Both the position numbers and the translations under genes were made by a program. 64,000 nucleotides of DNA from positions 12,472 through 76,471 of the forward strand of contig NIVC01002142.1 in the NCBI GenBank assembly GCA_002269645.1, read 5' to 3'. Under the pieces are notes generated by a model. The model ran no database searches, was not told where the DNA came from, and was given only the letters and a program-made list of their open reading frames with translations. This DNA comes from Macrostomum lignano. Its lineage: Eukaryota. Shown here in pieces: positions 461-48,571 of the stretch (its first letter is position 1; every line of letters starts with the position of its first letter).

Positions 461-3400
461 CCGTCATTGGCAAAGTTCGGCCCAACGCGGAAGCTCAGAG
501 AGCCGTCAGACTCGCAGACCAGCACCGAGCAGTTTGCCCTGTCCACAATGACCACGCGACGCTGTTTGCAGATTCGAACTCGGTGGGGTCGCAGATTCCG
601 AATAGCCTCATCGGCGGGGCCTGTCACAGTCAGCCGGCCGATCTGGCTGCCCCTGGAGTCATACGCCCGAATGGCTCCCGATGGCTGCTCCAGGATGAAG
701 CAGCGGTCGGCCAGCCCGCCGGCAGAGACGGCCCGTTCCGATGCGGCGAGCGTCAGCAGCACCAGACTAGCGATGGCGGCAGACGGACTGTCGGAGTGGC
801 TTGCGTCGGTGTCCTCACTGCAATTCAGTTTCCTGCGCCGCTTGCATTATTAACAGCAGATTAGTGTGCCGGTGTGTAGCAAGTGGGGACTGAGAATCTG
901 GGAGGCTGGCACAGCAACTGAGGATCTGGGAGGCTGGCACAACAACTGAGGATCTGGGAGGCTGGCACAGCAACTGAGGATCTGGGAGGCTGGCACAGCA
1001 ACTGAGGATCTGGAAGGCTGGCACAGCAACTGAGGATCTGAGGATCTGGGAGGCTGGCACAGCAACTGAGGATCTGAGGATCTGGGAGGCTGGCACAGCA
1101 ACTGAGAATCTGGGAGGCTGGCACAGCAACTGAGGATCTGAGGATCTAAGAGGGTGGCACAGCAACTGAGGATCTGGGAGGCTGGCACAGCAACTGAGGA
1201 TCTGGGAGGCTGGCACAGCAACTGAGAATCTGGAAGGCTGGCACAGCAACTGAGGATCTGGGAGGCTGGCACAGCAACTGAGAATCTGGAAGGCTGGCAC
1301 AGCAACTGAGGATCTGGGAGGGTGGCACAGCAACTGAGGATCTGGGAGGGTGGCACAGCAACTGAGGATCTGGGAGGCTGGCCCAGCAACTGAGGATCTA
1401 GGAGGCTGGCACAGCATCTGGGAGGGCGGCGGACCTACTATAGATTTAAACTGGGAATGAGTAAAGCGAACTGGGAAGGTAACTCTGGATCAACAATTAG
1501 TCGCTGCTAACATCTTCTCAGGGTGCAGGCCGCCAGCAGTGCGGGGCGCGCACAAGCCGCCATCGCAGCAGACGCCCAGCTGGCTGTCCGGCAGCCAGCA
1601 CATGTCTCTGACAGCGCCAGCCAAGCTCAGTCTGACCATTCGAACAATGCTTGAGCAGTCGCTGCTCAGGCACAGAATCCTTGGCCCCTCATCGGTGAGC
1701 ACGGAGACGAGGATGCCTTCATCGCTGGCCAGAACGCAAGGCCTGCTCAGTGACAAAATTTCATCAGGATGAGCAGCCTGCAGAGTCAGCGAGGCAGCCA
1801 TTTTAAATGCATTCACTTTGAAAGCGTAGAGACTGTAGCCATCTGGTTGCCTGGCAACCTCATCAACAACAAGCAGATTCTGCAACTTGCTACTCCAGGC
1901 CAGACTAATCGGATGCCTCAATCTGTTCAATTTTTTACTTTTATTCACGACAGTCTTCCAAGCGCTGGGATGCTGGAGCGAAACAAACAGAATGCCTTTG
2001 TCGGAGCAGCAGATGGCCAGCAGACTGCCAGTGCTGACCGCGTCTTCCAGGTTTTCGATGCTGTAGCTGGACAGAGAAAAAACGATTTCTGTTAAAATCT
2101 ATAAAGTTGGTTAATTATTACACTTGTAAATTCCAAAATTCAGACGCTTGCTGCGTGAATGTTCTCGCCAGTAAAGACAGAGACCATTGCATCGCAATAA
2201 TCCAACCAACCTGCAGCTGAATCTCGGTCCAACTTGAAAGCGCAGTTGACCATCTGGTTGGCAGACGGTCACAGTTTGGCCAGCTTGATCCAGGATGATA
2301 AGCAGCTGGCGCTTGTCGCATACTCGGATGCGGCTGGGATGCGGCGACAGCCGAGACACGCCAAGGCGGCCCAAATCTGCTCCCTCGGAGCTGAATGCTC
2401 GAATCTGGGACTCTGCGAGGGTGGTAGCGAAAATCCGACTGGACAAGCAGGCAGCCGACAATACGTAGCTTGATGTAGATACAGAGGCTGCGATGATAAA
2501 AGTGGAAAAGTCGACTCCACCAGTAGGCGACACCTTAGTCACAGGCTGAGCAGTCGGCATAGTCTCCTTAGACTGCACCGATGTTGATAGTTGGGCACCA
2601 CTGCCAGCACTCACCAAGCCTGAGCGCAGTTCTCTGCAATTTAAAAAACAGTAAAACTAGAAAACGTCAATATTCGGCGCTATTACACTTTAATGAGGGG
2701 TGAAGCTGAAGCGGTCCTCTCACCTGCGACAAGTATCGTCAAAGAATTTCTCAGGAAATGAGCTACAAACTCCATCAGCAGAGCATAGTATCAGTGTCTG
2801 GCTACGCCAACACATGTCAGTAACTGTTTCCATGACCGAGAGTTTAACAGTACCGATCAAGGAAGTACATGTATCGTTCATGCTGACAATCTGTGGTCCC
2901 TCACTGCTCAATACAGAGAGCAGAATACTGCTGCTGCTGCACAGCACGCACGGAGTGGCCAGGGACTTCACTAGCACACTGGATTGGGACACGAGAATCA
3001 GTCCGATAGTGGATGCAGCTTCATTTCCAACTGAAAACATTTTAACCATGTACTGACAGCTGTCAACTTCATCGAGAACTACTAGCTGTTTAAGCTTCGA
3101 GTGCCACTCCAACTGCACAGGACGCATCAGTTCGATTATCTTCTTTGGGATGGCCGTTCGGACCGAAATATTGGCAAAGTACACAGCAAAGATGCCGTTG
3201 CTCGGGCAGCAGATCATCAGCCGGCTCTCCGTGCTCACTGCGTCTAATGGCAGCTCCAGCAGCCTGAAATATAAAGATTTAGGCCCTTTAATTCGGATTT
3301 ACTATTGGTAACCATTGTTAAATGTGAATCAACGGCTTTCATGACTCCAATGCAAAATACAAACATATTAGAAAACTCGAAAAAGCATTGATTACATTAA

Positions 3401-4310
3401 GAGTTTTGAGCTACCTTTTCTTGCTGAACTTTGGCCCAACGCTGAACTCAAGCCGACCGTCAGGCCGACACACGGCCACAACACCGGCACTTTTGTCAAC
3501 TACAATCACCAGCTTCCGTTTGCTGCAGACCCGAATGCGATGGGGCTGCAGAGCCACCGCAGACCCATCAGGGTTCGTCACAGTCAGGTCGCGGATCAAA
3601 ATTGCTGGACTAGAAGAATTGCAAAATCGAATAACATTTGATGGCTGCTCCAGGACAAGGAGCTGGCCTGACAGGCTGGCGACAGACACGGCCTGTTTTG
3701 ATGCACCAGTAGCTGACGCAGCCTGTTTTGATGCACCAGTAGCTGACACAGACTGTTTTGATGCACCAGTAGCTGACACAGCCTGACTTGACGAATCAGT
3801 AGCTGACATAGCCTGTTTTGATGCACCAGTAGCTGACACAGCCTGATTTAACGAATCAGTAGCTGACACAGCCTGTTTTGATGCACCAGTAGCTGACACA
3901 GCCTGATTTAACGAATCAGTAGCTGACACAGCCTGTTTTGATGCACCAGTAGCTGACACAGCCTGACTTGACGAATCAGTGGCTGACTCAGCTCCTGAGG
4001 CATCAAGAAGTTTCTTCATCACTCTGAGCAGTTCGCTAGCCGCAGACTCCGCCGCAGCCTCATCCCAAGAGCAGCTGACTGCCCAGCTGGACTCATCACT
4101 TAGAGCCTCATCCAGGACAGCCTCAGCATCCAGCAGCTCCTCTAGAGAGGCTGGCAGCTCCATATCGACGATGGCCCGCAGGCGGTCTCGAGCCCGGCTT
4201 CGGCTGGCCATCTCCGCGGCTACAGCAGTCCGGCGCCTCTGCACAGCCAGTTGAAGCTGCTCAACGAAGCTGCTGGGCTGCGGCAGGGCGTCAACGGCCG
4301 GCGAATCCAT
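461..4310 (-). CDS. Multi-propeller gene C: helical N-terminus + 10-aa repeat linker + tandem divergent NHL-like beta-propeller units (3' end probably beyond the window start)
   Basis: Hand-built exons: 4310-3415, 3263-2724, 2633-2211, 2066-1512, 832-461. All introns are GT..AG and phase 2, and internal exons are multiples of 3. NHL-like blades include PHRVRICKQRRVVIVDRANCSVLVCESDGSLSFRVG and LRHPISLAWSSKLQNLLVVDE. A further donor (GG|GTCAG) at 460 suggests more exons outside the window. Confidence 0.75.
888..1420 (+). repeat. 28-bp minisatellite array (CTGAGGATCTGGGAGGCTGGCACAGCAA), intronic in gene C
   Basis: Direct tandem repeats; they produce the spurious PPRSSVAVPASQILSCC ORFs. Confidence 0.95.
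3690..3990 (-). repeat. Coding 30-bp minisatellite (QAVSATGASK/QAVSATDSSS), ~10 units, gene C linker
   Basis: In-frame tandem repeats inside ORF 3411-4310. Confidence 0.9.
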
Positions 4311-5286
4311 GCTGAAATATTATACGTTGCCATGGAAACTATAAGAAACCGAATTTCTAGGCTCTGAGTCCTACCCTAAAGTTAAATGAAATGAAGAAAA
4401 CAATGGTCATAAAATGTCAACACGAGCTGACAGGGCAGCCTTTGTTATTTTCATAGAGCATTTAATATAGAAAATATGGCACAGTGTTGAACAAATAGTT
4501 TCTCTGCAATAAGTGTTGAATAAATAACACATTAATAGGCAATCACCGCATACACTGAAGAGTCGGAAAAGTCGCAAATAACGATTCAGTGGCACCACAA
4601 AAGCGTTAAACTACAGCACAGCTTAAAATAATAATTTACCGCGTGGTTGGCCACCGGATAACATCGAAAATAAACGAATTATAAGTAGAGGATAAGTAGA
4701 GACTCCACCTTATGAGCTTAAGTTTACAGACTAGTCTTTAATTATCCTCTTGCTTGTTCTCTCCTATTCCAAGTCCAATTTTTGTCGCTTTTTTCGCAAA
4801 ATCCAGCTTTCTGGTGTCACTGTGAGCAGAATGACGTATCATTTGTGTGCATAGGTTACTCGGGCTCCGCTTTTATGAGCTTAAGTTGACAGGCCCTTTC
4901 AAATTATCAGCACTCAATTTGATACAATTAAAAGGTAAATTTTAATTTCATAGTCGTTTTGTCATCCTTTTAACAAAAGTCAAAGACTAAAGCCCTAAGC
5001 CATCAGGCTCCGATTGACGAGTAGTTTGACAGTTTGGTCCGGTTCCGGTTATTCCTGATTCTCTGAGAGCATAAATATCCACGAGCCTGATGATAGTGAA
5101 CCTGATTTACCAGCCTAAATCTTGAATAAAAAAAATAAAAAATCACAGAGCTGTGGGCATCATGCCCCATTCCGCTGACTCCTGAGCACCCATACACACA
5201 CTCACTGGTAATTCGCACTATCTACTTAAAGTACTAGTAGGCAACTTAGCCAATCTACGAGTAAATGCATGCAAACTCAACTAACT

Positions 5287-8200
5287 TCAGGTGTCAAGAA
5301 TCAGCTTTCCACCGCAGCACAGCCAGAGCTGCCGCCCCGCCCAGCTCATGTCGGTGACGGCGCCGCCATCCGCAGGCAGCTGGCAGTCCGCGACGGTGCT
5401 GACAGCCGAGCAGTCGTCGGCCACGCTCAGCAGCCGAGGCCCCTCCTCGGTGAGCGCAGACAGCAGGAAGCCGCCGCTGCTGCTCAGCACGCTGGGGACG
5501 GCCAGGGAGCGAACGGGGTCGCGAAGAGCGGCCTGGAGATGCAGCGTGGCAGCAGTAGGGCTCTTCACGATCTGGAAGGTGCTCACGGAGAATCTGTCGG
5601 TGGAGACTTCGTCAAGCACGATGAGCAACTGGCGGGAGCCGCTCCAGGCCAGGCGGATCGGCCGGCGCAGCTTGTTGCGCTCTTTTTTTATTGTGGTTCT
5701 CCACTGGCTGGGCTGCTCCAGGGACACCAGGTAGAGGCCCCTGTCAGGTGAGCAGATCGCCAGCAGCTCGCCAGTGCTGATGGCGTCTGATGGCTTAGAA
5801 AGCAGAAAGCTGCAGATCCGGAAGGTGAACAATGAAATTAATTTTTACAGGCAATTGAGCAAAGATGATTACAATTTCAATTCGCCTTACTTAGTGCTGA
5901 ATCGAGGACCAACAGAAAACTGCAGTCTACCCTCCGAGCTGCACACATAGACAATTTGACTCAGCTCATCAATGAGAATGAGAAGCCCGCGCTCCTCGCA
6001 GACTCGAATTCGCGCTGTCTGCGGGCTGAGCTTTGAGCCGTCAGATTTGGTCAGCGTCAGCAGCTGCCTGCTGGCCGGGCGATTTCGATCACAGTCCATT
6101 GACGTCACAAGGACGGATCTGGAAGTCGGCTCCAGAATGTACAGCTGATCAGACAGGCGGGCTGCTGAGGAAACCAGGATGTCAGAGGTGACATCAGCTG
6201 GACTCTGCTGTTTTGGCGCAGCTGTCTCCGCTGATGGGGTCCAACTGCTGCAGCTGTGGCGGAATTGGCATGGCGGACATTAAAAGTTTTTAGTGACACT
6301 TTTGGCTCTGTGTTGGCTCGGTTCTTATCAGTAATAATAAGCCAGCAAGAGCAGCCGAACAAAAATTGAAGCGAGCGAGTGACAATTGAAGCGACCGAGT
6401 GACAAGTGAAGCGAGCGAGTGACAATTGAAGCGACCGAGTGACAAGTGAAGCGACCGAGTGACAATTGAAGCGACCGAGTGACAATTTAAGCAACCGAGT
6501 GAAAATTGAAGCAGCCGAGTGACAATTAAAGCAACCGAGTGAAAAGTAAAGCAACCGAGTGATGATTTAAGCAACAGAGAGAAAATAAAAGCAACCGAGT
6601 GACAATTGAAGCAACCGAGTGAAAATGGAAGCGACCGGGTCGATTTGGCAAAATACAACAGCTGAAAAAAACATTTAGAATGACAAACCTCTCATAGCTA
6701 ATTTCCGGCCAGAGTAGTAGCTTGTTTCCATGGCAACAAGCCAGCTCTCGCTGCCACCAAAACAAGTTAGTAGCCAATGAAGAACCCGCATCTTCAACGG
6801 TAAACTGTTGCACTGAATCGCACTGACTGCCAGACAGCAGAAGAACTTTGGATCCGCTGGTACCGCTGACAGACACCAAGATGCAATCCCGGCCGCACAG
6901 CAGACTCGGCCTAGTCAGCGACTCAACCGGAACTCCACCCGCTGGAGATCCTTGCGGAGACAGCGCGGCCGATGTCTTGATGACAGTGATGGTAAAGGCC
7001 AGGATTCTGTACGCACCGGGTCGCACTCTGCGCCCGGTGGACGCAGCCGCGGTCTCGTCGGCCACCACCAGCCACTTGCGCGAGGCCATCCAGCCGAGAC
7101 GCACCGGACAGGCGAGGTCGCAGCGGCCTTTCCGCACGGTGGTCCGCCAGGCGTCCGGTTTGGTTAGCGACACCAGGTAGAGAGCGAACTCGGGACTGCA
7201 GATGGCGAGCAACTGACCGGTGCTGACAGCGTCTTCAGGGGCTTCCAGGCTGTAGCTGCATTGGAAACAGTCAGTTAGCAGTGCAGAATGAGTGCTTGAT
7301 ATAGTAATATTTTAACTGAAGGACCAGATAAAGAATCCCATAGCGAGACTCGGACAGGCGAGAGATTGGATGAAAGAAAAGATAGAAGATAAGAGAGAAG
7401 AACGGAGAGAGAAATAAGAGGGAAGAGAGGAGAGGGAGAGGGAGAAGAGGAGAGAGGAGAGAAGATAGGGAAGAGAGGGTACAGGAGAGTGAGAAGAGAG
7501 GGGAAAGAGAGCTCAAAAAAGAGACACCAATCTTGAGCGGGCCGGATTGCTATGGTGAAGTTTCAAATGACCGGAGGGCCGGACTGAGAGGCTTCTCGGG
7601 CTGCATGTCTCCCATGGACCGGAATCTGGCGACCACTATTTTACCGCGTAACCCTGACACCGGACTACGAAACCCTGCAGTCAAGCTTAAAGCAAAGACT
7701 GCAACGGATCGAAATTCTACTGACTCCCTGTGGCTGGTAGGAACAGTAAGAAGGGATTCCAACGAAGCGACACTGAGCTGCCCAACCCGAACCTCGAAAA
7801 TTTGTGTTGCAGAAAGTGTCTTTTCTCTTTATGGACTTTGTCAGTTTCATTATGTATGGAACTCTGCAACTGCGAATTATCTTCGATACACGGCAGCTTA
7901 TGAACTATTGAGCTCAGTAAACTCACGCGTCGCTAAACTTTGGCCCAACCTGGAAGCTGAGCTGGCCATCTGGCTGGCAGACGAGCACCGCACTCGGGTA
8001 TACGATGAACACCAAGCGACGGCTACGGCAAACTCGAACAGCGCGCGGCTGCTGCGATGCAACTGACGCAACTGACGCAGCAGCTGAGCTGGTTACTGAC
8101 AAGCTGCTAATTTGGCTTGACTGCGAGTCGCAGACTCGAACAGCTGGAGACTTCAGCTGAAGAAAAAAGCACTGGCCCGACAGAAATGCAGCCGAGTAAA

Positions 8201-10025
8201 TTTGTACCGACGAGCCCATTGTAAGCAGAGTCTGGGGTGGAACAGCTGAGGCTCCAGGCTGAGTAGCTTTGCTGAGCTCTGAAGCTTGACTGTTGGTCAG
8301 CTTTGGAAAATACTGGTATTCTCTGCAATGGAAATAAAGCAGCACACAGCTCAGGTTGTTCCGCAATCAAAATGTGACAGTTCAGGCTCTCTCACCTGCC
8401 ACAATCAGTAACCTGTCCACCGGAGCAAACAAGCAGTGTCTGGTCACTCCAGCACATGTCAGTCACTGGTTCCCTGACCGATAGGCGAACAGTTCTCAGC
8501 ACTGAAGTGCAGGCGTCATCCATGCAGACAATCTGCGGTCCCTCAGAGCTCAGCACAGACAGCAGAGTGCCGCTGCTGCTGCACAGCACGCACGGAGTGG
8601 CCAGGGACTTCACTGGAGCACTGGACTGGGACTTTACTTTTAAATTAGCAGACGTCTTTGTCAGGGAGATGGAAAATGCGTACAGTTTATAGTGACACTT
8701 TCCAACTTCGTCAAGAACGATTAGCAGCTTCGGCTTCAACAGCCACTCTAGACGCACAGGCCTTTTGAGCTTGAGCAGCTCCTTCACGAGTGTCGTACGC
8801 CAACTCTTAGGACGTGCGATGGACACCATCAAGATCGCAGAGTCTGGACAGCAGAATACGAGCTGGTCACCTGTACTCACTGCGTCCTCTGGGTGTTGCA
8901 CGAGCTTTCTAAAGTGGAATTCAAGCTTTAAATGAAATCGTGCAAAAGTATACTTTATTAAATCGGGTTCACTAACTTGTGGCAGCTGAACTTTGGCCCA
9001 ACGCTGAACCCAAGCTGACCGTCAGGCCGACAGACGGCCACAACACCGGCACTTTTGTCAACTACAATCACCAGCTTCCGTTTGCTACAGACCCGAATGC
9101 GATGGGGCTGCAGAGCCACCGCAGACCCATCAGGGTTCGTCACAGTCAGGTGACTGACCGAGGCTGCAGCGCCAGGAGAGCCGAAATTCCGAATGACATT
9201 TGATGGCTGCTCCAGCACAAGGAGCTGGCCTGACAGGCTGGCCACGGACGCAGCAGCCTGTTTAGATGCACCAGTAGCTGACACAGCTTGACTTGACGAA
9301 TCAGTAGCTGACACAGCCTGTTTTAACGAATCAGTAGCTGACTCAGCCTGTTTTGACGAATCAGTAGCTGACACAGCCTGACTTGACGAATCAGTAGCTG
9401 ACACAGCCTGACTTGACGAATCAGTAGCTGACACAGCCTGACTTGACGAATCAGTAGCTGACACAGCCTGTTTTGATGCACCAGTAGCTGACTCAGCCTG
9501 ATTTGACGAATCAGTAGCTGACACAGCCTGTTTTGATGCACCAGTAGCTGACACAGCCTGTTTTGATGCACCAGTAGCTGACGCAGCCTGTTTTGATGCA
9601 CCAGTAGCTGACACAGCCTGACTTGACGAATCAGTAGCTGACACAGCCTGTTTTGATGCACCAGTAGCTGACACAGCCTGACTTGACGAATCAGTGGCTG
9701 ACTCGGCTCCTGAGGCATCAAGAAGTTTCTTCATCACTCTGAGCAGTTCGCTAGCCGCAGACTCCGCCGCAGCCTCATCCCATGAGCAGCTGACTGCCCA
9801 GCTGGACTCATCACTGAGCGCATCATCCAGGACAGCCTCAGCATCCAGCAGCTCCTCTAGAGAGGCTGGCAGCTCCATATCGACGATGGCCCGCAGGCGG
9901 TCTCGAGCCCGGCTTCGGCTGGCCATCTCCGCGGCTACAGCAGTCCGGCGCCTCTGCACAGCCAGTTGGAGCTGCTCAACGAAGCTGCTGGGCTGCGGCA
10001 GGGCGTCAACGGCCGGCGAATCCAT
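5287..10025 (-). CDS. Multi-propeller gene B (~1136 aa, three A+B NHL-like units)
   Basis: Exons 10025-8977, 8908-8396, 8322-7927, 7255-6689, 6253-5891, 5809-5287 (TGA). They sum to 3411 nt in frame, and all five introns are phase 2. The N-terminus MDSPAVDALPQ is near-identical to gene C. Confidence 0.78.
6370..6640 (+). repeat. 20-bp minisatellite (GAGTGACAATTGAAGCGACC), gene B intron
   Basis: Tandem degenerate copies seen directly. Confidence 0.9.
9255..9715 (-). repeat. Coding 30-bp minisatellite, ~15-16 units, gene B linker
   Basis: In-frame tandem repeats inside ORF 8958-10067. Confidence 0.9.
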
Positions 10026-10089
10026 GCTGAAATATTGTTCGTTGCCATGGAACTTATTGGAAAGCATAATATTGTAACGTAAGTAGCTT

Positions 10090-10350
10090 TAGACGAGTAG
10101 CCTAGTGGTCCAGGTGCGGTCCAGTCTCGATTCCAAGTGCAGTCACTTAATTTTTGGGGCTAAATTAGAATCTCGGCTTGGCTCTGCTCGTGCGATTAAC
10201 GCTCTTGATGACCAACCCCCAAGGCACAGTGAAGTGTACATGCCTAACGATAAATAAAGTTAGGGCCGCTGTACACTCCTGTGTGAGTGTGTGCCTGTGC
10301 GTATGACTGCCGCGCGCTTGTGTGCCTGCTCAGAGGGAGTCGGCGGAATG
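10090..10350 (+). mobile_element. SINE-like element (family 1), between genes A and B
   Basis: tRNA-like head GTAGCCTAGTGGTCC. The body GTGTACATGCC...AGGGCCGCTGTACAC..TGTGTGAG is shared with 15650-15800. Confidence 0.55.
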
Positions 10351-10945
10351 GGCAGTAATGCCTCTCGCCGGTTGTGCGACAATGTCGCAAAATCTGCACC
10401 ACGGGTGCACACAGCCCCCTTGACTCTAAGTAAACACAGCTACCTTTACTAGAAAGACGTGGGCCATTTTTGAAGCTATAAAGAAAAAATGCGGATTGTT
10501 TTGGTGCTGTAGCAACTGATTTTAGCATCAGTTGGTTTCGTGAAAATTGAAAAATAAATTTATTGGATAACCAACAGTAGAACAAATATAACTTTTGTTA
10601 GATAAATAAATAGATATGAAGAGTCTAACAGCAAAACAGGCATAAAATACTACTACTGGAAAAATTTCCTTCTAGTCATGGTAAATTATTATCGAGGTGA
10701 AAAAACTATGCATCATCTAATCAGACACTTCTTAGCAATGTAAAACTAACATCGAATGAAAGCCAGTGAATAAAGAATCAACTGTTCTCTTTACAAAAAG
10801 GGTAAAAGCTCTTAAAATGTTGCAATTGTATTGTAATGTTTTAACTACTCCTAGCTAAACTATAGAAAGTCAGGCAGAATAGTTTAATACTTGATAGTCA
10901 GAATACTCAGATTTCCCGAGATGATCTATTAAACATCTAGACGAA

Positions 10946-13900
10946 TTAAACACTGGAAATCACTGGTCCATCAGGCTGGACTGATGACGTTGAAGTGATG
11001 GAAGACAAAGACGGGGCCAAGTCAGGCTTAATCAACTTGCCACCGCAGCACAGCCAGAGCTCCCCCTTAAGCCAGCTCATGTCGGTGACGGCGCCGCCAT
11101 CCGCAGGCAGCTGGCAGTCCGCGACGGTGCTGACAGCCGAGCAGTCGTCGGCCACGCTTAGCAGCCGAGGCCCCTCCTCGGTGAGCGCAGACAGCAGGAA
11201 GCCACCGCTGCTGCTCAGCACGCTGGGGACGGCCAGGGAGCGAACGGGGTCGCGAAGAGCGGCCTGGAGATGCAGCGTGGCAGCAGTAGGGCTCTTCACG
11301 ATCTGGAAGGTGCTCACGGAGAATCTGTCGGTGGAGACTTCGTCAAGCACGATGAGCAGCTGGCGGGAGCCGCTCCAGGCCAGGCGGATCGGCCGGCGCA
11401 GCTTGTTGCGCTCTTTTTTTATTGTGGTTCTCCACTGGCTGGGCTGCTCCAGGGACACCAGGAAGAGGCCCCTGTCAGGCGAGCAGATCGCCAGCAGCTC
11501 GCCAGTGCTGATGGCGTCTGATGGCTTTGACAGCGACGAGCTGAAGATGCGTAAAGGTGAAGTAAATCATCAATTTGAAAGATGGAGCTAGCTTTTGGTT
11601 TGATATCTATGACAGATTGGTGCTGTATCTGATACTTTTGGCAGCTGTTTTTTAAGTCCCTTTTATCTTAACAAACAAAAGCTGAGCATTCGACCCCAGC
11701 CACGGCCAATAGAAAGCAATAATGTACTATGGAAATATCTCCTAATGCAAATACTGAAAGATACAATGTAAACCTTTGTTGCACCAACCCAGTTGAATAC
11801 GCATTCTCAAGATAATAAAGATTCCAGTTGCCTCTTGTTACGGCTTATACAGTGCTGGCAACTCCCAGCTTGTACATAGCTGCTTTCTAAGTCAAAGCAG
11901 GCTCACTGTTGCTGCCTCCAGGGGTGACGCAAACAGCCAATGCGTACTAACCGCTGCCAACTCTGCTTAACTAGCAATCCCTTGAGCTGGCTGATAAGGA
12001 CAAGCAAAAAAACTAAATGATGAAGCTTCAAACTCACTCAGTGCCGAATCGCGGTCCAACTGAGAACCACAGTCCGCCCTCCGAGTCGCAAACGTGAACA
12101 GCTTCAGCTGACGGGTCAAGCAAGATGAGGAGGCCGCGCTCCGAGCAGACTCGAACTCGCGCTGGCTGCGGCACGAACTCGGCCTGTCCCGACTGGGTCA
12201 GCCTTAACTTGTCGGCCGACAAATGGCCAAGCGACTTGGACAGCTGGACAGAACCGGATGGCAGTTCAAGGACGAAGCCTCTGTCAGGCGATAAGAAGGC
12301 CGCAGACTCGACGTACGGTTGGCACGAGGCGTCGCTGTAGCTGGAAGAAATCAAACAAGTTCTCTATTAACCCGATAAATAAGAAATACACGATATTAAA
12401 TTTGAAAAAGGCATAGAGAATGCCCGCCTTATACTACTGCTAGCCATTTGATGAGAACATACATGTAGCACTAGCAGTAGTGCAGTAGTGAGTTGAAGTC
12501 AGCTGTTACTAGCATATTCACTGTTCTTGATGAAATCATTATAACTATGATACTAACCTTTCGTAGTGAACATCGGGCCATAGCAACAGCCTGTTGCCAT
12601 GGCAACCAGCCAGGCGCTGGTCCCACCAGAACAGGTCGGTTACCGCCAGACTGTCAGCAGTTGCCTCTCCATCGGAGAATTGCTGCACAAGCTGGTGGGC
12701 TCCAGCGGCGATGAGCACTATAATATTTGAGTTGTTCGGCCTGCTGCAAGCTGCCAGGATGCAGTCCCGACCGCACAGCAGGCTCGGCCTAGTCAGCGAC
12801 TCAATAACAACCGGCAAGCACTGCTTAAATAGCGTAGCCGCTTTCTCGTTTGAGCTGATAGAGAACGGCTGGATTCTGTAGAAAACCCTATCGGGCAATT
12901 GGTCGGCTACGACTAGCCACTGACGGGAGGCCAGCCAGGCCAGGCGCACCGGACAGGCGAGTCCGCAGCGCCGTTTCGTGACGACAGTTCGCCAAGTGGC
13001 TGGGCGTTTTAGCGACACCAGGTAGAGCGCGAACTCCGGACTGCAGATTAGTAGAATGCTGTCGGCAGCGACTGCATCCTCGGGGGTCAGCAGGCTGAAG
13101 CTGCGAGTAGTTATTTAGAGGCACAGGCAGAATTAAAACTAGCCGAGAAAATTTGCAGCAAGAAAGGTACCAGCTCAGAATTGCAGCAGCTGTCTAATTT
13201 TAGAACTTTAAATCAAAAAATAGAAGTGAGGAGGAAAGGAGAGAAAAGCAAAGAGAGCTGAGACGAGACACAAAATCCTGAGCGGTCGGGATTGCTATTT
13301 TGAAGTTTCAAAAGACCCGAGGATAACAGTACATGTACAGAACACACAATTTTACAGTTAGAGAAGCTGGGAAAGAAACTACAATGGATTATTTGAAGAT
13401 ACCTGTAAACCATAAACTATTGTCTACTGGTAATTATTGCAATCATTTCATATAGAATCCCATCTTACGCATCGTTGAACTGGGGCCCAACGCTGAAATA
13501 GAGCCCACCATCTGGCCGGCACACATGCACAGAGCAGGCCGCCCTGTCCAGCACTATCACCAGTTGAAGCTTCTGGCTTGCCCGGACACAGTGCGGCCGC
13601 AAATTGGAAATTGTCTCTCCACTAGTCGGGTCGGTGACTGCCAATTCGCCAAGCTGATTGCCAAACGAATCGTATACTCGAACAGCTTGAGTAGGCTGCT
13701 CCAGCATATAGCACTGGCCAGACAGGTAAGCAGCTGATACAGCAGAGGCATTCGCTGTGCTTTTAGCGAATCTTGGGTCGTTCGAGTCCCTTAGCTTTCT
13801 GCAACAAAGTTTTAACGTTGCTTTTTTAGGCTTTAATTTTAGTCACTTGTGCAAGAAAAGTTTGGAGACACGGAATCCATATGGAAATAGGGATGTGTTC

Positions 13901-16900
13901 TGGAAAAACCGACCAAGGGAAGACTTCCCGACGTAGGGAAGACCACCTTGAGAATTGCTACTAACCAAGTGTTTTGCTAGCCTCGTAAATTGTTCATGGA
14001 AATTAACTCTACAGACTGAGTGTCTCAGCCAATCTTGACACTGTCGCAACCTTCCGACACTTACTTAAGAGTGCGTCCGACAGAACGCAGCTGGGCTCCT
14101 AATACTGGCATGACATGACAACTAATTTTAGATTTCCACAGGTCTACTTTTTAAAATTCGTTGGGTCCTCCGTGTCACCGTAAGCGACGCGGAAAGGCCT
14201 GGTGGCGACGCCTGTTGTATCGATAATAGGCAACGAATTTTTCGAACAAAGTAACGATGGTTATTGATTTCCTGGTAGCTATCTCGTCGTAGCTGATTGG
14301 TTGGTTTCCTTCCGGACTGAATATTTTGGGAATTTAAAAAAACGGCTCACTCCGGAACCAGGAAAGAGAAACGTCATTTATTGTGCGGTAAATGACGATA
14401 AAATAGATTGTAAAAATTATGAAAACAACCAACTTTTCCGGATGAAAACTGCAGCTTCCAGAATCCACCGTCCATAAGGCACCATCGCTGCAGATTCCTA
14501 GCCGGTTGTCCGGCAGCCAGCACATGTCTTTGACGGCACCGGCCAAGCTCAGTCTGACCACTCGAACAATACTTAAGCAGTCGCTGCTCAGGCACAGAAT
14601 CTTGGGCCCTTCACTGGTGAGCAAAGAGATCAAGATGCCCTCAGCGCTGGCTAGAATGCAAGGCGTGCTCAAAGATAGAAGCTGATCTGGCAAGACAGCA
14701 CACTGTTGCAGCATATTCGGTACAAATTGCTGCTGCACAGAGAAGGCGGCCAGTCCGTAGCGATTTTGGCCAGCCTGATCCACTACAAATACTATTCGAC
14801 GCTCGCAGCTCCAAGCCAGACGAACCGGGCGGTTCAACCGAATTTGGTTCTTTTTAACTGTCATTTTCCCAACAGTCGGCCCGTTCAAAGACACAAGAAA
14901 CAGGCCGCGATTCGGATTGCAAATTATCAGCACGTCGCCTGTACTGACGGCGTCCTCGCTGTTCGCTAGGCTGTAGCTGAAATACGGAAAATATAAATAT
15001 CGTCCTTAATGACTGCTAACAAATTGAAGATGAGTAGCACTATGTCAAATACAGTAAAATGCATGCCAGTTACTACACCACATCGGGGCTGAGAAGGCTC
15101 TCGTACAAAATTAACCTGGTTGAATTCAAGAGGACCACTAGAACTTACCGTTGTACCAGGACGTAACACTCGTAAATAGTGCAAAATAATCATGAAGGCC
15201 CGCTTGTTCACGAGTCCGTACGTGTATTTATAATCGATTTTCTACAAAAAAGCATCCTATTCGAACCACAGAAGCTCCAGAACAGGTGTAGTTATAATTT
15301 GTCAAGGCTTTAATCTGCTTAATCTACGATTACGAGCTGTTTGTGATGGAATCTTGCAACTCGTTTAAAACTTGCTGTGCTCTTTATGCAGATAAACTGT
15401 TAGCGTTACTAATTCAACAATTAGCTTGCAATAAATTATCAGACGGGTTTTTAGCTAATTTCTTATAAATATGCTTTAGCTGTCATAAAGTTATCTCACT
15501 AACCCTACGCTGTATATATGCTATGTTGTACTGTTTTAGAATTATTATTGTAAGTGCAACTGATTCGGAGTTATGAGCATTTAAATTTTAGCTGCAATGC
15601 AAACAAATAAGGCCTTCAAATAATTTTGCAATATTTGCGAGTGTTACGTCCTGGCACTCTCGGAGAGTGTACATGCCGAACATGATGAGAAAGTCAGGGC
15701 CGCTGTACACCCTGTGTGAGCGTGTGGGTGCTCAAGGTTCAGCAGAATGGGCCTGACTGCCCAAATAATAATAATATTGATTTATTAATCAATATTATTA
15801 TTAATCAATAATTTTTTGATTCTACCAATGGGCAGATGTGCAACCGACAGCTCAGCCGCAGCTATTGCGCAGCGCATCTAAAGGTTGCGCACGGCTGTTT
15901 AATCTAGCTGGCACTCATTTTAAAGCTGGGTGAACTGAAGCAATTTAAGGACACAAATTGGTCTGAGTAGGCCGAGAATCGAACCCCTGACCTTTTAGTC
16001 GAGAGTCCGACGCTCTAACCACCAGGCTACAACCCCTCCAGGCAAACATAGCGCACACATATGTGGCAGCAATTGAAGCTCAGATTCAATTCAAACAAAA
16101 TTTCGACTAAAAATTTAAAAAACTAACAAATGTGCCGCAATAGCAGAGCGCACCTACAAAGACTGATTAAACTTGTACAATGCAACTCTTATCCTGCAAC
16201 CGCAGCTCGGAGCTGCTACCCCCAACTCTACCCTGGTTCGATAAAAACCATCGATACCAATTCCAACCAACCCACCAGCTGCTGAATCTCGGTCCAACTT
16301 GAAAGCGCAGTTGGCCATCTGGCTGGCAGACGGTCACAGTTTGACCGGCCTGGTCTAGGATAACAATCAGCTGACCTTCGCTGCATGCTCGGATGCAATG
16401 GGGACGAATAACTATTGCAGATCCATCGTGATTGGTCACGTTAAGGCTACCAACACAGTTCCAATGTGAGTTGTACACGAATATAGAATGCGTTGATCGC
16501 GAGACAACGAAGCACTGATCTGACAGACTGGCTATGGAGACAGAGTCTGTAGCTAAGATAGGCTGATAGCAGGCAACTGTCTCTACCACATCTGCTAAGT
16601 TAACTACTGAAGCTGTGGGTGAGACAGGCTGAGTGGGCGCTTCAGCACGCGAAGCAGCTTTTTTCTTACCAACTTTTTTAGTCACAATTGCAGACTCAGC
16701 GACAAATGCTCTACAATAAGAATGAACGGAAATGACAATCAATGATACAGATTAAGCTGAGCAAAATCATACATTTAAATAGCTCTCACCTGTCATCAGC
16801 ATCATCAATAACCTCCTGTATCGCACAGACTTCTCCACCGGAGCAGACAAGCAGTGTCTGGTCACTCCAGCACATGTCAGTCACCGGTTTCCTGACCGAT

Positions 16901-18203
16901 AGGCGAACAGTTCTCAGCACTGAAGTGCAGGCGTCATCCATGCAGACAATCTGCGGTCCCTCGGAGCTCAGCACAGACAGCAGAGTGCCGCTGCTGCTGC
17001 ACAGCACGCACGGAGTGGCCAGGGACTTCACTGGCTCACTGGACTGGGACTCTGATTTCAGTTCAAATACATATTTCTTCTCCTCGGTAATGGAAAACAG
17101 GTTTAACAAGTACTGACAGCTGTCAACTTCATCAAGCACGACCAGTTGTTTGATCGTAGAGTTCCACGCTAAGCGTACAGGATGCGTCAAATTGGTAGTT
17201 GAGTTTAGAAAAGCTGTGCGCACGGATGGCCGGTAGAGGCAGGCCATGAAGAGGCCGGTGGTAGGGCAACATATTATCACGAATGAGCGTGCACCCACTG
17301 CGTCTTCAGGCTGCTTTAAATGCCTACGAAAAATAAAATGCGGGAAGGAAAATAATTTACGTATCAGAAACTTATGGAAAAGAGAGCGGTGAGGAAAATT
17401 CAGAGATTAGTGGAGCGGTGAGGCAAGTTCAGAGTATGAATAAAGATCGGAATTTACTTTTTCTTGCTGAATTTCGGCCCAACGCTGAACTGCAATTCGC
17501 CGCCAGCCTGACAAACAATAACAACACCGGCTGATTTATCAATCACTACAAGCCTTTTAGCGCTGTACTTCCGAATGCGGTAAGGCTTCACAACCACTGC
17601 ATTCGATTCAGCATCCGTTATTTTGAAGTTTCGGAGACTGCCACCGAGGCAGTCGGTAAATTGAATAACACCCGATGGCTGATGGAGATAGACTAACTGG
17701 TCAGACAAACAAGCAACTGACTCAACCTGATGAAACGTGTCTGTGGCTGACTCAGCTTGGTGAAGCGAGTGGGAGCCTGACTCAATCTGATGAAGCGAGT
17801 CGGTGGCTGACTCAATCTGATGAAGCGTGTCTATGGTTGACTGTATCTGGTGAAGTGAGGCTGTGGCTGACTCAGCCTGGTGAAGTGAGGCTGTGGCTGA
17901 CTCAGTCTGTTGAGACAAGTTGGAGCCCATTGCTTGATTTAAGATACGGAGCAGGTCTCGTGTTGCCGACTCTGCCTCAGCTTCATCCCATAAACAACTT
18001 ACTGCCCAGCCTCCTGTCGCCACTAGTGCCTCATCCAGCGCAGACTCCGTATCGCAAAACTCCTGCAGCGAAGCTGGCTCTGCGTCAATCAGCATTCGCA
18101 ATTGTTCTCTAGCTTGATGCCAATCATCCAGCTGCAGACTAATACTGGCTCGCTGTCTCTCCGCGGCCACTAGTAGCCAATCAATGAAGTCCCGCGCAGA
18201 CAT
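10946..18203 (-). CDS. Multi-propeller gene A (~1342 aa, four A+B NHL-like units)
   Basis: Exons 18203-17458, 17323-16790, 16710-16276, 14976-14434, 13798-13469, 13100-12558, 12340-12038, 11540-10946 (TAA). They sum to 4029 nt in frame, and all seven introns are phase 2. B exons begin with (P)EDAVS(T)G-like motifs and end in V(T/K)DM(C/S)W or TDLFW; A exons end in DG.L.F.VGP.F. Confidence 0.78.
15650..15800 (+). mobile_element. SINE-like element (family 1) 3' part with (AAT)n tail, gene A intron
   Basis: Homologous to about 10230-10340; ends in AATAATAATAAT. Confidence 0.55.
15830..16040 (-). mobile_element. tRNA-derived SINE (family 2), gene A intron
   Basis: On the minus strand: A-box-like TAGCCTGGTGGTTAGAGC and B-box GGTTCGATTC, then a TTCACCCAGCTTTAAAATGAGTGCCAG core. 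A partial second copy lies at 45850-45960. Confidence 0.7.
17670..17900 (-). repeat. Coding 30-bp degenerate repeat (QAESATASLH), ~7 units, gene A linker
   Basis: In-frame repeats inside ORF 17454-18203. Confidence 0.8.
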
Positions 18204-22123: not shown

Positions 22124-25100
22124 CTATCCGGAATTTATTGAAGACTCGCGTGGAATCTCCTGATGTTGCGGCGGCTGCTGCTGCTGCTGCTGCTGAAGCT
22201 GCTGCTGCGACTGACTGCCGGACAGTCTGGAAGCCGCCTTGGACGACAGGCCGGACAGAAAGCCGGACATGGCGCTTCCGGCGTTGTAGATGGCGCCGCC
22301 TGTTTGTGAAAATGGGGATCAGATCAGTCTCCCCTCTCCCACCCATTTCCTCACCTGTCTCCCCTCCCCCACCCATTTCCTCACCTGTCTCCCCTCCCCC
22401 ACTCATTTCCTCACCTGTCTCCCCTCTCCCACCCATTCCTCACCTGTCTCCCCTCTCCCACCCATTTCCTCACCTGTCTCCCCTCTCCCACCCATTCCTC
22501 ACCTGTCTCCCCTCTCCCACCCATTTCCTCACCTGTCTCCCCTCCCCCACTCATTTCCTCACCTGTCTCCCCTCTCCCACCCATTCCTCACCTGTCTCCC
22601 CTCTCCCACCCATTTCCTCACCTGTCTCCCCTCCCCCACTTATTTCCTTACATGTCTCCCCCCACCCATTCCTCACCTGTCTCCCCTCTCCCACCCATTT
22701 CCTCACCTGTCTCCCCTCCCCCACTCATTTCCTTACATGTCTCCCCCCACCCATTCCTCACCTGTCTCCCCTCTCCCACCCATATCCTCACCTGTCTCCC
22801 CTCCCCCACTCATTTCCTCACCTGTCTCCCCTCTCCCACCCATTCCTCACCTGTCTCCCCTCTCCCACCCATATCCTCACCTGTCTCCCCTCCCCCACTC
22901 ATTTCCTCACCTGTCTCCCCTCTCCCACCCATTCCTCACCTGTCTCCCCTCTCCCACCCATATCCTCACCTGTCTCCCCTCTCCCACCCATTTCCTCACC
23001 TGTCTCCCCTCCCCCACTCATTTCCTCACCTGTCTCCCCTCTCCCACCCATTCCTCACCTGTCTCCCCTCTCCCACCCATTTCCTCACCTGTCTCCCCTC
23101 CCCCACTCATTTCCTTACATGTCTCCCCCCACCCATTCCTCACCTGTCTCCCCTCTCCCACCCATTTCCTCACCTGTCTCCCCTCTCCCACCCATTTCCT
23201 CACCTGTCTCCCCTCTACCTTTCAATCCCTCTCTCGATCTCTGGCATTTGCCGAACTCTATATGCACTCATAAAGCGGCGCGTCTCACTTACCAACCACT
23301 TTACCGGTGTCTTCTAGAGCTCTGCCAGTCGACTGCACAGCGCTAGACACCTTTCTGCCTTGGTCTGTGCCCGTTAAAAACCTGGAGAAGAAAAAATTAT
23401 AACACAAATAAGCACAAAATTTAGACTTACATCTGTCAAATCTTTAAGCACAAGTCCCAAATCAAACGAAAGTCCAAATTCATGTAAAAAGCTTAAACTT
23501 CTCCCCATTCTCTCTACTTCTCACTATTCTCTTTGCTTCTCACCATTCTCTCTACTTCTCACCATTCTCTCTACTTCTCACCATTCTCTCTACTTCTCAC
23601 CATTCTCTCTACTTCTCGCCATTCTCTCTACTTCTCGCCATTCTTTCTACTTCTCACCCATTCTCTCTACTTCTCACCATTCTCTCTACTTCTCACCATT
23701 CTCTCTACTTCTCACTATTCTCTCTACTTCTCACCATTCTCTCTACTTCTCACCATTCTCTCTACTTCTCACCATTCTCTCTACTTCTCGCCATTCTCTC
23801 TACTTCTCGCCATTCTTTCTACTTCTCACCATTCTCTCTACTTCTCACCATTCTCTCTACTTCTCCCGATTCTATCTACTTTTTAAGTTCTCATTGTTCT
23901 CTCTACTTCCCATTGGATCTCCCTGCAGCTAAGTTGGGCCAATTCAGGCCGCCAATCCTGTCTTCAACTCCAATTTCGCATGCCTCGCCCGATACAGAAA
24001 CACAAAGCCAAGTCACCGCTCACTGGTTCAGCCTGACGCCCAGCGCGCTCTGACCGTGGCATGGATGCCGCCTGGACGCGCCAGCAAGGCCGTGGCGCGG
24101 ACCGGCTAGCCAGGCCCGATAGTGAAAGGTGGCCCGTAGGGCTCGCACGTAGCTGGCGTTGAAGTCGCCTTCCTCGCTGGATGAGCCGCTGCCGCCGCCG
24201 CCTCCTCCTCCGGATTCGTCGAGAGACGAGTTGGAGGCGGCGGGCTCGGCCCCAGCGGCGCCGCTGCTGGAGTCGGCCGTCAGTAGCAAAGCGGTGAGGT
24301 AGGCGCGAAACTGGGCCCGCAGCCAGTCGTCTGAGCCTTCCCATTCTGCAGAGTAGCGAAATAGAAATATAAGACTAAAATAGCGGCGCTAGGCTGACTA
24401 ATAACACATGCGCCAAAACAAGTAGTATATAGGGAGTTTTTCGGGGAATTTTAAAATCCCAGGGAGGGCGGCGATGCCCCAGCAGCTGAGGATCTGGGAG
24501 GCTGGCACAGAAACTGAGGATCTGGGAGGCTGGCCCAGCAGCTGAGGATCTGGGAGGCTGGCACAGCAACTGAGGATCTGGGAGGCTGGTCCAGCAGCTG
24601 AGGATCTGGGAGGCTGGCCCAGCAACTGAGGATGTGGGAGGCTGGTCCAGCAGCTGAGGATCTGGGAGGCTGGTCCAGCAGCTGAGGATCTGGGAGGCTG
24701 GCCCAGCAGCTGAGGATCTGGGAGGCTGGTCCAGCAGCTGAGGATCTGGGAGGCTGGTCCAGCAGCTGAGGATCTGGGAGGTATGTGTCTTAAAAGCCCC
24801 TACCGGATCCAGCAAACAGATCTTCATCCTCCAGCGTCAGCTCTCCGTCGGCATTATCAGCCGTTGCCGCGCCCGCCGACGTCGCCTTGTCCAGCAGGCG
24901 CTGAATGAATGCCTCGTCGGGGCCGGTCAGCCGCAGCAGGCGGGCCAGGCCGCGGTCGTAGATGGCGAAATCGGCGGCGTCGGCGCCAAGCAGAGCGTCG
25001 ATTCGGCGCCGAGTCTGCGGCTGCCTGAAAAGTACATTGTTGGCGCCGAGCAGGCAGGCGCGCACGTTGGCGTCCTCTAGCAGGCCGATCTGCTGCAGTG

Positions 25101-48027: not shown

Positions 48028-48103
<76 letters not shown>

Positions 48104-48229
48104 AGCCTTTCTGTCTGTCTGTCTGTCTGTCTGTCTGACTGTCTGTCTGTCTGTCTGTCTGTCTGTCTGCCTGTCTGTCTGTCTGCCTGTCTGCCTGTCT
48201 GTCTGTCTGTCTGTCTGTCTGTCAGCCTT

Positions 48230-48260
<31 letters not shown>

Positions 48261-48263
48261 GAC

Positions 48264-48296
<33 letters not shown>

Positions 48297-48379
48297 GCCT
48301 GTCTGTCTGCCTGTCTGCCTGTCTGTCTGTCTGTCTGTCTGTCTGTCAGCCTTTCTGTCTGTCTGTCTGTCTGTCTGCC

Positions 48380-48414
<35 letters not shown>

Positions 48415-48507
48415 GTCTGTCTGCCTGCCTGTCTGTCTGCCTATCTGTCTGTCTGTCTGTCTGTCTGTCTCTGTCTGCCTGCTTGTCTGTCTGTATGCCT
48501 GTCTGCC

Positions 48508-48543
<36 letters not shown>

Positions 48544-48571
48544 AGCCTTTCTGTCTGTCTGTCTGTCTGAC

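What the first reader, a model, noticed from the sequence alone, without database searches (positions are those of the whole stretch)
461..17458. All 16 introns of the propeller genes are phase 2: a symmetric exon cassette that permits mix-and-match splicing
Seen: every internal exon is a multiple of 3 (e.g. 534, 435, 543, 330, 543, 303 nt in gene A) and every intron I could define is phase 2. Any A donor could therefore splice in frame to any downstream B acceptor. The first exons of genes B and C are also preceded by TTTCAG|C ATG, an acceptor that is phase-2 compatible, so read-through chimeras across genes would stay in frame. Inference: this architecture could generate combinatorial propellers, analogous to Dscam-type diversification. 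It may instead only reflect origin by duplication of one two-exon unit.
Basis: partly seen in the sequence, partly recalled or inferred. Interest (0 to 1): 0.7.

Follow-up and report, generated by a model that had tools for sequence, protein, structure and literature searches.

The report
Duplicated two-exon propeller modules, flatworm genes
Three neighbouring flatworm (Macrostomum lignano) genes are built from repeated two-exon modules that each encode one six-bladed propeller domain; all their introns share one reading-frame phase because they are copies of two ancestral introns, and no public gene model shows the exons being shuffled during splicing.

Summary
On the minus strand lie three tandem paralogous genes: A 18203→10946, B 10025→5287, and C 4310→461, which runs off the window. 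In my models all 16 introns are GT-AG and phase 2, and every internal exon length is a multiple of 3. RNA-seq-derived GenBank models support 15 of the 16 junctions.

The Dscam-like interpretation is not supported.
- The 16 introns are copies of only two ancestral positions. One lies inside the propeller, between blades 2 and 3. The other lies between propellers.
- The within-propeller intron sits at the same place and phase in distant single-propeller paralogs.
- Each exon pair encodes a complete NHL-like six-bladed propeller (AlphaFold pLDDT 88; best fold matches Thin, TRIM71, TRIM2 and Brat NHL domains).
- All 23 public protein models join the exons consecutively.
- I found no intronic docking/selector complementarity above chance.

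The TTTCAG|C before the ATG of B and C is real. It matches the published M. lignano spliced-leader trans-splice acceptor motif, in an operon-like array with gaps of 920 and 976 nt. The only chimeras are three older UniProt models, apparently MAKER predictions, that fuse B to C through this acceptor. These are probably prediction artefacts.

Verdict: an ordinary case of symmetric-exon module duplication in a gene family seen almost only in M. lignano.

The parts
17458..18203 (-). Gene A exon 1 (746 nt): ATG at 18203, helical N-terminus, 30-nt coding minisatellite, blades 1-2 of propeller 1
   Evidence: Donor GAAAAA|gtaaat, phase 2. No transcript-derived model covers this exon in A. Homologous to B1/C1.
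16790..17323 (-). Gene A exon 2 (534 nt), type b: blades 3-6 of propeller 1
   Evidence: P0024 (PAA60530.1) is 100% identical from an internal Met in this exon onward.
16276..16710 (-). Gene A exon 3 (435 nt), type a: linker plus blades 1-2 of propeller 2
14434..14976 (-). Gene A exon 4 (543 nt), type b: blades 3-6 of propeller 2
   Evidence: Same junctions in the homeolog.
13469..13798 (-). Gene A exon 5 (330 nt), type a: propeller 3, blades 1-2
   Evidence: Part of the AlphaFold-modelled unit.
12558..13100 (-). Gene A exon 6 (543 nt), type b: propeller 3, blades 3-6
12038..12340 (-). Gene A exon 7 (303 nt), type a: propeller 4, blades 1-2
10946..11540 (-). Gene A exon 8 (595 nt including stop), type b: propeller 4, blades 3-6
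   Evidence: 95.7% nucleotide identity to B exon 6.
10027..10032 (-). TTTCAG acceptor directly before C-ATG of gene B (first exon base 10026)
   Evidence: Fits the [T/C]TNCAG spliced-leader acceptor motif of M. lignano. Lies 920 nt downstream of the A stop.
8977..10025 (-). Gene B exon 1 (1049 nt): ATG 10025, helical N-terminus, 15 copies of a 30-nt coding repeat, blades 1-2 of propeller 1. A second possible acceptor, CAG|CCC, has its first exon base at 9992.
   Evidence: Junction confirmed by the B-like model P0034.
8396..8908 (-). Gene B exon 2 (513 nt), type b
   Evidence: A 218-nt patch is 97% identical to A exon 2.
7927..8322 (-). Gene B exon 3 (396 nt), type a. Most like the unit-3 exons A5/C5, weakly.
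6689..7255 (-). Gene B exon 4 (567 nt), type b, ortholog of A6
5891..6253 (-). Gene B exon 5 (363 nt), type a, ortholog of A7. An alternative acceptor 6 nt downstream (6247) is used in the ML2 models.
5287..5809 (-). Gene B exon 6 (523 nt including stop), type b, ortholog of A8. It contains the cryptic donor CT|GTGCTG (GT at 5320-5319) used by the fused ML2 models.
4312..4317 (-). TTTCAG acceptor directly before C-ATG of gene C (first exon base 4311)
   Evidence: Lies 976 nt downstream of the B stop. Used as a cis-acceptor in the UniProt models P0001, P0003 and P0023.
3415..4310 (-). Gene C exon 1 (896 nt): ATG 4310. The inner acceptor CAG|CCC has its first exon base at 4277. At the equivalent site the GenBank CDS of the C homeolog begins.
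2724..3263 (-). Gene C exon 2 (540 nt), type b
2211..2633 (-). Gene C exon 3 (423 nt), type a
1512..2066 (-). Gene C exon 4 (555 nt), type b
461..817 (-). Gene C exon 5 (357 nt), type a. The donor GG|gtcaga at 461 opens an intron that runs off the window start.
   Evidence: In the homeolog the gene continues with an 870-nt exon and a 517-nt last exon.

Best explanation
The region holds three tandem paralogs of a Macrostomum lignano gene family. Each protein has a helical N-terminus, a variable 10-residue repeat tract, and then three or four NHL-like six-bladed beta-propellers.

Each propeller is encoded by an exon pair. Exon 'a' holds a linker plus blades 1-2. Exon 'b' holds blades 3-6. There are only two kinds of intron:
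- The a|b intron lies in the loop between blades 2 and 3.
- The b|a intron lies between propellers.

Both kinds are phase 2. The a|b intron is older than the multi-propeller genes. The b|a intron had to share its phase for the module to be duplicated in tandem without breaking the frame.

Module duplication gave a four-propeller, eight-exon gene. Gene triplication, loss of module 2 in gene B, and patches of gene conversion then produced the present array. The '16 of 16 phase 2' pattern is therefore inheritance, not design.

Splicing is constitutive and consecutive as far as transcript-derived models show. The AG in front of the ATG of B and C is most likely a spliced-leader trans-splice acceptor that resolves an operon-like transcript.

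Shown here: gene models, phases, homology of intron positions, the propeller fold, consecutive junctions in public models.
Inferred: the order of duplication events, the trans-splicing role of the acceptors, absence of minor isoforms.
For: -
- Exons alternate between two homologous types, and junctions fall at the same alignment columns: GPxF plus 2-3 codons for a|b, and after the last strand for b|a.
- Orthology groups are {A2,B2,C2}, {A4,C4}, {A6,B4,C6}, {A8,B6,C8} for type b and {A1,B1,C1}, {A3,C3}, {A5,C5,B3?}, {A7,B5,C7} for type a. So B lacks module 2.
- Distant single-propeller paralogs (at most about 35% identity) on another contig have the a|b intron at the same site in phase 2 (P0045, P0010, P0008). 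The two-propeller member P0009 has a phase-2 b|a intron. N-terminal introns in the same family are phase 0 or 1.
- AlphaFold2 of unit A5+A6 gave pLDDT 87.9 and pTM 0.88, with 24 strands forming 6 blades. The junction residue 96 lies between strands 84-89 and 104-108.
- The top Foldseek matches are NHL domains of Thin, TRIM71, TRIM2/3 and Brat, with TM 0.65-0.70.
- A profile search against PDB sequences put TRIM3 NHL first at E = 7e-4.
- RNA-seq-derived GenBank models give consecutive junctions, all phase 2. How those models were made is described.
- Gene-conversion-like patches of 95-97% identity sit within otherwise 76-86% identical paralogs.
- The spliced-leader acceptor motif [T/C]TNCAG and the 1-kb operon criterion come from PMC8629364. 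The gaps here are 920 and 976 nt, and the motif occurs at 10032, 4317 and 18235.
- In another array (L004), the annotated starts of the 603-aa gene and P0010 lie 2 nt after TTTCAG. That array has intergenic gaps of about 600 nt to 1.8 kb.
Against: - I could not examine any read-level RNA data. The GenBank models come from an assembler run that drops minor isoforms (TACO --isoform-frac 0.75), so rare skipping isoforms cannot be excluded.
- A intron 1 has no transcript model.
- Genes B and C are not annotated in GenBank on this contig, only on its homeolog.
- Three UniProt/ML2 models do contain an in-frame B-to-C junction.
- B exon 3 is only weakly assignable to module 3, so the deletion scenario for B is approximate.
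- The GenBank B-like model has two phase-0 GC-AG gaps of 60 and 240 nt inside the 30-nt coding repeat. I read these as repeat-collapse artefacts.
Confidence: 0.85

Rival explanations
1. One reading: the symmetric phase-2 cassette is used for combinatorial, Dscam-like alternative splicing. Any 'a' donor joins any downstream 'b' acceptor within and across genes, generating many hybrid propeller proteins.
For: All 16 junctions are phase 2, so every skip is in frame. An a(i)+b(j) hybrid would still have 2+4 blades. B and C homeologs appear to share one transcriptional-unit name (Mlig023818 g1/g2), so cis-splicing between them is physically possible.
Against: - None of 23 public models shows a skipped exon.
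- Each exon pair is a separate complete domain, not an alternative for one position.
- Half of the in-frame combinations (a-a, b-b) would give incomplete propellers.
- Inter-intron complementarity is no greater than in shuffles: 11, 8 and 9 nt observed, and 64, 98 and 51 of 100 shuffles reach the observed value.
- Uniform phase is fully explained by descent.
Confidence: 0.03
2. Low-level in-frame read-through ('conjoined') transcripts are real. In a polycistronic B-C (or A-B) precursor, a donor of the upstream gene is sometimes cis-spliced to the TTTCAG|C acceptor of the next gene. This would give giant proteins with seven or more propellers alongside the normal separate mRNAs.
For: Three UniProt models from the ML2 assembly (A0A1I8FRI7, A0A1I8J615, A0A1I8J625) join CT|GTGCTG (exon end 5321, 33 nt before B's stop) to AG|C ATG of C, in frame. 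B-like and C-like genes carry one transcriptional-unit prefix.
Against: - The donor GTGCTG lacks the GT[G/A]AG consensus of this species.
- The same annotation set also fuses unrelated neighbours (P0005).
- The RNA-seq-based GenBank models end B at its stop and start C separately.
- The C-like CDS begins at a different, phase-0 acceptor.
Confidence: 0.1
3. The models are wrong and the phase uniformity is an artefact of choosing splice sites to fit a frame.
For: Several junctions score poorly with a generic splice matrix and had to be placed by paralog homology. Examples are A introns 4 and 5, B introns 1, 3 and 4, and C intron 4.
Against: Independent transcript-derived GenBank proteins reproduce 15 of 16 junctions residue for residue.
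Confidence: 0.02

Closest known systems
Symmetric-exon protein modules spread by intragenic tandem duplication (exon-shuffling rules of Patthy; classically class 1-1 modules such as EGF, Ig and LDL-receptor YWTD/EGF units). This comparison rests on established knowledge.
   Same: A self-folding domain is bounded by introns of one phase, repeated in tandem in frame, with module gain and loss between paralogs (here gene B lacks module 2).
   Different: The class here is 2-2 rather than the common 1-1. The module is two exons with an internal intron of the same phase. The proteins show no signal of being extracellular mosaic proteins.
Dscam1-type clusters of mutually exclusive alternative exons
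   Same: Tandem homologous exons with identical phase, so substitutions stay in frame.
   Different: Here all copies are included consecutively in every public model. Each pair encodes its own domain. No docking/selector complementarity was found. Exon types alternate (a, b, a, b) rather than forming a cluster of variants of a single exon.
NHL-repeat six-bladed beta-propellers of TRIM-NHL proteins (Thin/TRIM32, TRIM71/LIN-41, TRIM2/3, Brat)
   Same: Predicted fold, with TM 0.65-0.70 over about 285 columns. Weak sequence-profile similarity (TRIM3 NHL E = 7e-4; Pfam NHL E = 0.008-0.04). A helical region lies N-terminal to the propeller.
   Different: No RING or B-box was detected. There are three to four propellers per chain instead of one. 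Sequence identity is 12-16%, and the Pfam NHL match is below the gathering score.
Spliced-leader trans-spliced operons of Macrostomum lignano (PMC8629364; PMC5730564)
   Same: Same-strand genes under 1 kb apart, with a [T/C]TNCAG acceptor immediately before the downstream start codons. Homeologs of B and C are named as g1/g2 of one unit.
   Different: Spliced-leader reads could not be inspected here. Two candidate acceptors exist per gene: TTTCAG|C, and CAG|CCC 33 nt downstream.
Conjoined / read-through gene models
   Same: An upstream-gene donor is joined to an acceptor at the 5' end of the next same-strand gene, in frame (the ML2 models).
   Different: The donor is a weak cryptic site inside the terminal coding exon. 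Support comes only from predicted models.

Membership tests
Dscam-type mutually exclusive exon array | Tandem homologous exons of equal phase | tested here: met
   However, two exon types alternate rather than forming a cluster of variants of one exon.
Dscam-type mutually exclusive exon array | Only one variant of the array is included per mRNA | tested here: not met
   All 23 public models, including the RNA-seq-derived GenBank models, contain every exon in consecutive order. Read-level data were not available.
Dscam-type mutually exclusive exon array | Variants encode alternative versions of the same structural segment | tested here: not met
   Each a+b pair forms its own complete six-bladed propeller.
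Dscam-type mutually exclusive exon array | Docking/selector complementary intronic sequences | tested here: not met
   The longest inter-intron complementarity is 11, 8 and 9 nt in A, B and C. It is reached by 64, 98 and 51 of 100 shuffles. This was a crude exact-match test.
Symmetric-exon module duplicated in tandem | Repeated units are homologous, with introns at homologous positions and the same phase | tested here: met
Symmetric-exon module duplicated in tandem | The intron position predates the duplication (present in single-module relatives) | tested here: met
   The a|b intron is in phase 2 at the same site in P0045, P0010 and P0008.
Symmetric-exon module duplicated in tandem | The module corresponds to an autonomous folding domain | tested here: met
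   AlphaFold2 pLDDT 87.9, closed 6-blade propeller.
NHL-repeat beta-propeller | Six-bladed propeller fold closest to solved NHL domains | tested here: met
   The top 17 Foldseek matches are all NHL domains, E 1e-9 to 1e-7.
NHL-repeat beta-propeller | Match to Pfam NHL (PF01436) at the gathering score | tested here: not met
   14.5 and 16.6 bits against a cut-off of 20. The PDB profile search hit on TRIM3 NHL had E = 7e-4.
TRIM-NHL protein | RING and B-box domains N-terminal to a coiled coil | tested here: not met
   No RING or B-box hit in Pfam for A, B, P0029 or the paralogs. UniProt's 'RING-type domain-containing' name for P0001 is not reproduced.
Spliced-leader-resolved operon (M. lignano criteria of PMC8629364) | Adjacent same-strand genes at most 1 kb apart | tested here: met
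   The gaps are 920 nt (A-B) and 976 nt (B-C).
Spliced-leader-resolved operon (M. lignano criteria of PMC8629364) | The downstream gene is spliced-leader trans-spliced (leader-containing reads at an acceptor) | tested here: inconclusive
   The motif is present. The GenBank CDS of the C homeolog is 5'-partial and starts exactly after CAG.

The most novel reading that the evidence does not exclude
B and C (and possibly A and B) are co-transcribed. A fraction of the precursor is cis-spliced from an upstream phase-2 donor into the TTTCAG|C acceptor instead of being trans-spliced. The uniform phase 2 of the whole array would then let operon read-through yield in-frame giant multi-propeller fusion proteins, as the three ML2 models depict.
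Probability: 0.1. Interest if true: 0.5.

Novelty: new member of a known kind. Interest (0 to 1): 0.2.

Why it matters
The result is mainly cautionary. Uniform intron phase across many exons looks very improbable until shared ancestry is counted, after which it reduces to one or two events.

The locus is a clean, young example of module duplication with symmetric (2-2) exons. It includes loss of a whole module in one paralog and precise loss of one intron in another.

It also documents a family of proteins with three to four NHL-like propellers per chain, found essentially only in M. lignano. And it shows how a trans-splice acceptor next to a start codon can lure gene predictors into in-frame fusions.

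If real B-C fusion transcripts exist, the locus would be a test case for competition between cis-splicing and spliced-leader trans-splicing in flatworm operons.

Tried and rejected
- The search for homologous proteins performed poorly on this family. The gene A query returned only P0001. A B6-C1 junction query returned nothing, although P0001 contains that exact sequence. I therefore could not mine assembled RNA contigs for junction evidence.
I used the six-unit alignment A2 instead.
- The generic splice-site scoring placed several junctions wrongly. These were resolved by paralog homology and later confirmed by the GenBank proteins.
- ARAGORN and Rfam found nothing in the window, so the tRNA-looking stretches are not callable tRNAs.
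- A literature search for the gene identifiers found no paper.
- P0001's 'STK|PSD' junction has no canonical GT-AG solution in this sequence. I treat it as a prediction or assembly artefact, not as a phase-0 intron.
- I rejected the two phase-0 GC-AG 'introns' inside the 30-nt repeat of the B-like model as repeat-collapse artefacts. Their lengths, 60 and 240 nt, are multiples of the repeat unit.

Full report
**What is there**

The region is eukaryotic, and its genes lie on the minus strand. Open frames alternate between two homologous exon types.
- Type 'a' ends in F-x-V-G-P-x-F.
- Type 'b' begins near x-E-D-A-V-S-T-G.

I placed GT-AG junctions using frame and paralog homology.
- Gene A runs 18203→10946 with 8 exons.
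- Gene B runs 10025→5287 with 6 exons.
- Gene C runs 4310→461 with 5 exons in the window, then runs off it.

All 16 introns are phase 2.

**Identity of the sequence and independent support**

- The best public match is from Macrostomum lignano.
- The window is identical to NIVC01002142.1:12472-76471 of assembly GCA_002269645.1, also called Mlig_3_7.
- GenBank models of that assembly derive from a genome-guided RNA-seq transcriptome: StringTie and TACO plus a de novo assembly, cut into genes at trans-splice and poly(A) sites (PMC5730564).
- PAA60530.1 (P0024) equals my gene A from an internal Met in exon 2 to the stop. This confirms A introns 2-7.
- A collinear copy, 92-99% identical (L002, NIVC01002143.1), carries A-like, B-like and C-like models.
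- Mapped to DNA, these have 15 real introns, all phase 2, with the same splice-site sequences as in the window. They include the donor that corresponds to window 461.
- The C-like gene continues with an 870-nt exon and then a last exon. The ancestral intron between modules 3 and 4 has therefore been lost in C.
- Only A intron 1 lacks a transcript-derived model.

**Why the phases agree**

The junctions fall at only two alignment positions.
- The a|b junction lies 2-3 codons after GPxF.
- The b|a junction lies after the last strand of the unit.

An AlphaFold2 model of unit A5+A6 is confident (pLDDT 87.9, pTM 0.88). It shows 24 strands forming six blades.
- Exon a gives blades 1-2 and exon b gives blades 3-6.
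- The a|b junction lies in the loop between them.
- The best structural matches are NHL propellers of Thin, TRIM71, TRIM2/3 and Brat, at TM 0.65-0.70.
- A sequence profile weakly finds TRIM3 and TRIM2 NHL domains and NHLRC2. Pfam NHL stays below threshold.

A profile search of 1.84 billion representative proteins found only 20 relatives. Essentially all are from M. lignano.

Distant relatives on another contig carry the same introns.
- Single-propeller relatives have the a|b intron at the same site and phase.
- A two-propeller relative has a phase-2 b|a intron.
- Their N-terminal introns are phase 0 or 1.

So the a|b intron is ancestral. The b|a intron shares its phase, as in-frame tandem duplication of the module requires.

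Exon orthology shows a four-module ancestor that was triplicated, with module 2 missing from B. Patches of 95-97% nucleotide identity lie within otherwise 76-86% identical paralogs and point to gene conversion. The 16 introns therefore represent one or two independent events, not 16.

**Test of the mix-and-match idea**

- I mapped 23 public protein models of these genes and their homeologs to the exon set. All follow consecutive exon order.
- Complementarity between introns does not exceed shuffled controls.
- Each exon pair is a separate domain, not an alternative for one slot.
- Of the in-frame skips, only a-to-b joins would keep a six-blade propeller.

**The acceptor before the ATG**

TTTCAG|C ATG is present before both B and C. 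The two copies are one duplicated sequence, and homology ends about 27 nt upstream of the ATG.

The published M. lignano spliced-leader data fit this site (PMC8629364).
- Thirty percent of the species' genes are spliced-leader trans-spliced.
- The acceptor motif is [T/C]TNCAG.
- Same-strand genes at most 1 kb apart, with the downstream gene trans-spliced, are classed as operons.

Here the gaps are 920 and 976 nt. Gene A also has CTTCAG 27 nt before its ATG. In the other array (L004), the annotated starts of the 603-aa gene and P0010 lie 2 nt after TTTCAG.

The B-like and C-like GenBank genes are named Mlig023818 g1 and g2, which is consistent with one transcriptional unit cut in two. The C-like CDS is 5'-partial and starts exactly after CCGCAG, 33 nt inside the ORF.
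- The spliced leader ends in ATG, so it would supply an in-frame start there. This is inference.
- That acceptor is phase 0 and would be out of frame with phase-2 donors.

**The one piece of support for chimeras**

Three UniProt models from the older ML2 assembly join a cryptic donor in B's last exon (exon end 5321) to TTTCAG|C of C, in frame. They are P0001, P0003 and P0023.
- The donor lacks the species consensus.
- The same annotation fuses unrelated neighbours elsewhere (P0005).
- The RNA-seq-based models keep B and C separate.

I regard these fusions as prediction artefacts. Low-level read-through transcripts remain possible.

**Verdict**

The explanation is ordinary: duplication of a two-exon, symmetric-phase NHL-like propeller module, followed by tandem gene duplication, with trans-splice acceptors at gene starts. 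The Dscam analogy fails three of the four features tested.

Noticed in passing
window 3685-3992, 9254-9702, 17717-17913: A coding 30-nt (10-residue, S/T/A/Q-rich) minisatellite lies in exon 1 of all three genes. Copy numbers differ: about 10 in C, 15 in B and 6.6 in A. The B-like homeolog's exon 1 is 510 nt longer. The GenBank B-like model has two 'introns' of 60 and 240 nt inside it, which look like repeat-collapse artefacts.
   Followed up: partly
window 4277 and 9992 (first exon bases after CAG), minus strand: A second acceptor, CCGCAG|CCC, lies 33 nt inside the ORF of B and C. The GenBank CDS of the C homeolog starts exactly there. The species' spliced leader ends in ATG and would be in frame, giving M-PSSFVEQ... 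instead of MDSPAVDALPQPSSF...
   Followed up: partly
L002 20900-21769 (just beyond window position 1): Gene C has a single 870-nt exon where A and B have two exons separated by a phase-2 intron. This is a precise intron loss in one paralog.
   Followed up: partly
window 889-1420; also 24478-24781, 25534-25880, 35723-35940, 52306-52695, 53181-54054: A 28-nt satellite (ACTGAGGATCTGGGAGGCTGGCACAGCA) lies inside C intron 4 and recurs at five other places in the window on both strands.
   Followed up: no
window 6364-6637 and about 7380-7500: A 20-nt minisatellite lies in B intron 4, and a purine-rich (GA) low-complexity tract lies in B intron 3.
   Followed up: no
window about 15960-16030 and about 10090-10140: Short stretches look tRNA-like by eye: one in A intron 3, one in the A-B spacer. 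ARAGORN and Rfam report nothing. They may be degenerate tRNA-derived repeats.
   Followed up: partly
window 5287-10025 and 461-4310: Genes B and C have no GenBank gene model on this contig. Their homeologs on NIVC01002143.1 do.
   Followed up: partly
window about 22124-27247, minus strand: The upstream same-strand neighbour of gene A is an Avl9-domain gene with a 636-residue product. Gene A is named g4 of its unit (Mlig001956).
   Followed up: no
window 19000-64000: The rest of the window is unusually rich in long minisatellites with periods of 19-43 nt. It also has a 1.4-kb (CTGT)n tract at 48019-49464 and a C-rich 30-nt array at 22327-23216. These explain the strand-skew spikes in the composition profile.
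   Followed up: no
L004 (NIVC01001995.1:80715-107346) and L003: A second tandem array holds five mostly single-propeller family members. Some intergenic gaps are about 600 nt. A RING-finger gene lies next to a two-propeller member. This hints that the family descends from TRIM-NHL genes.
   Followed up: partly
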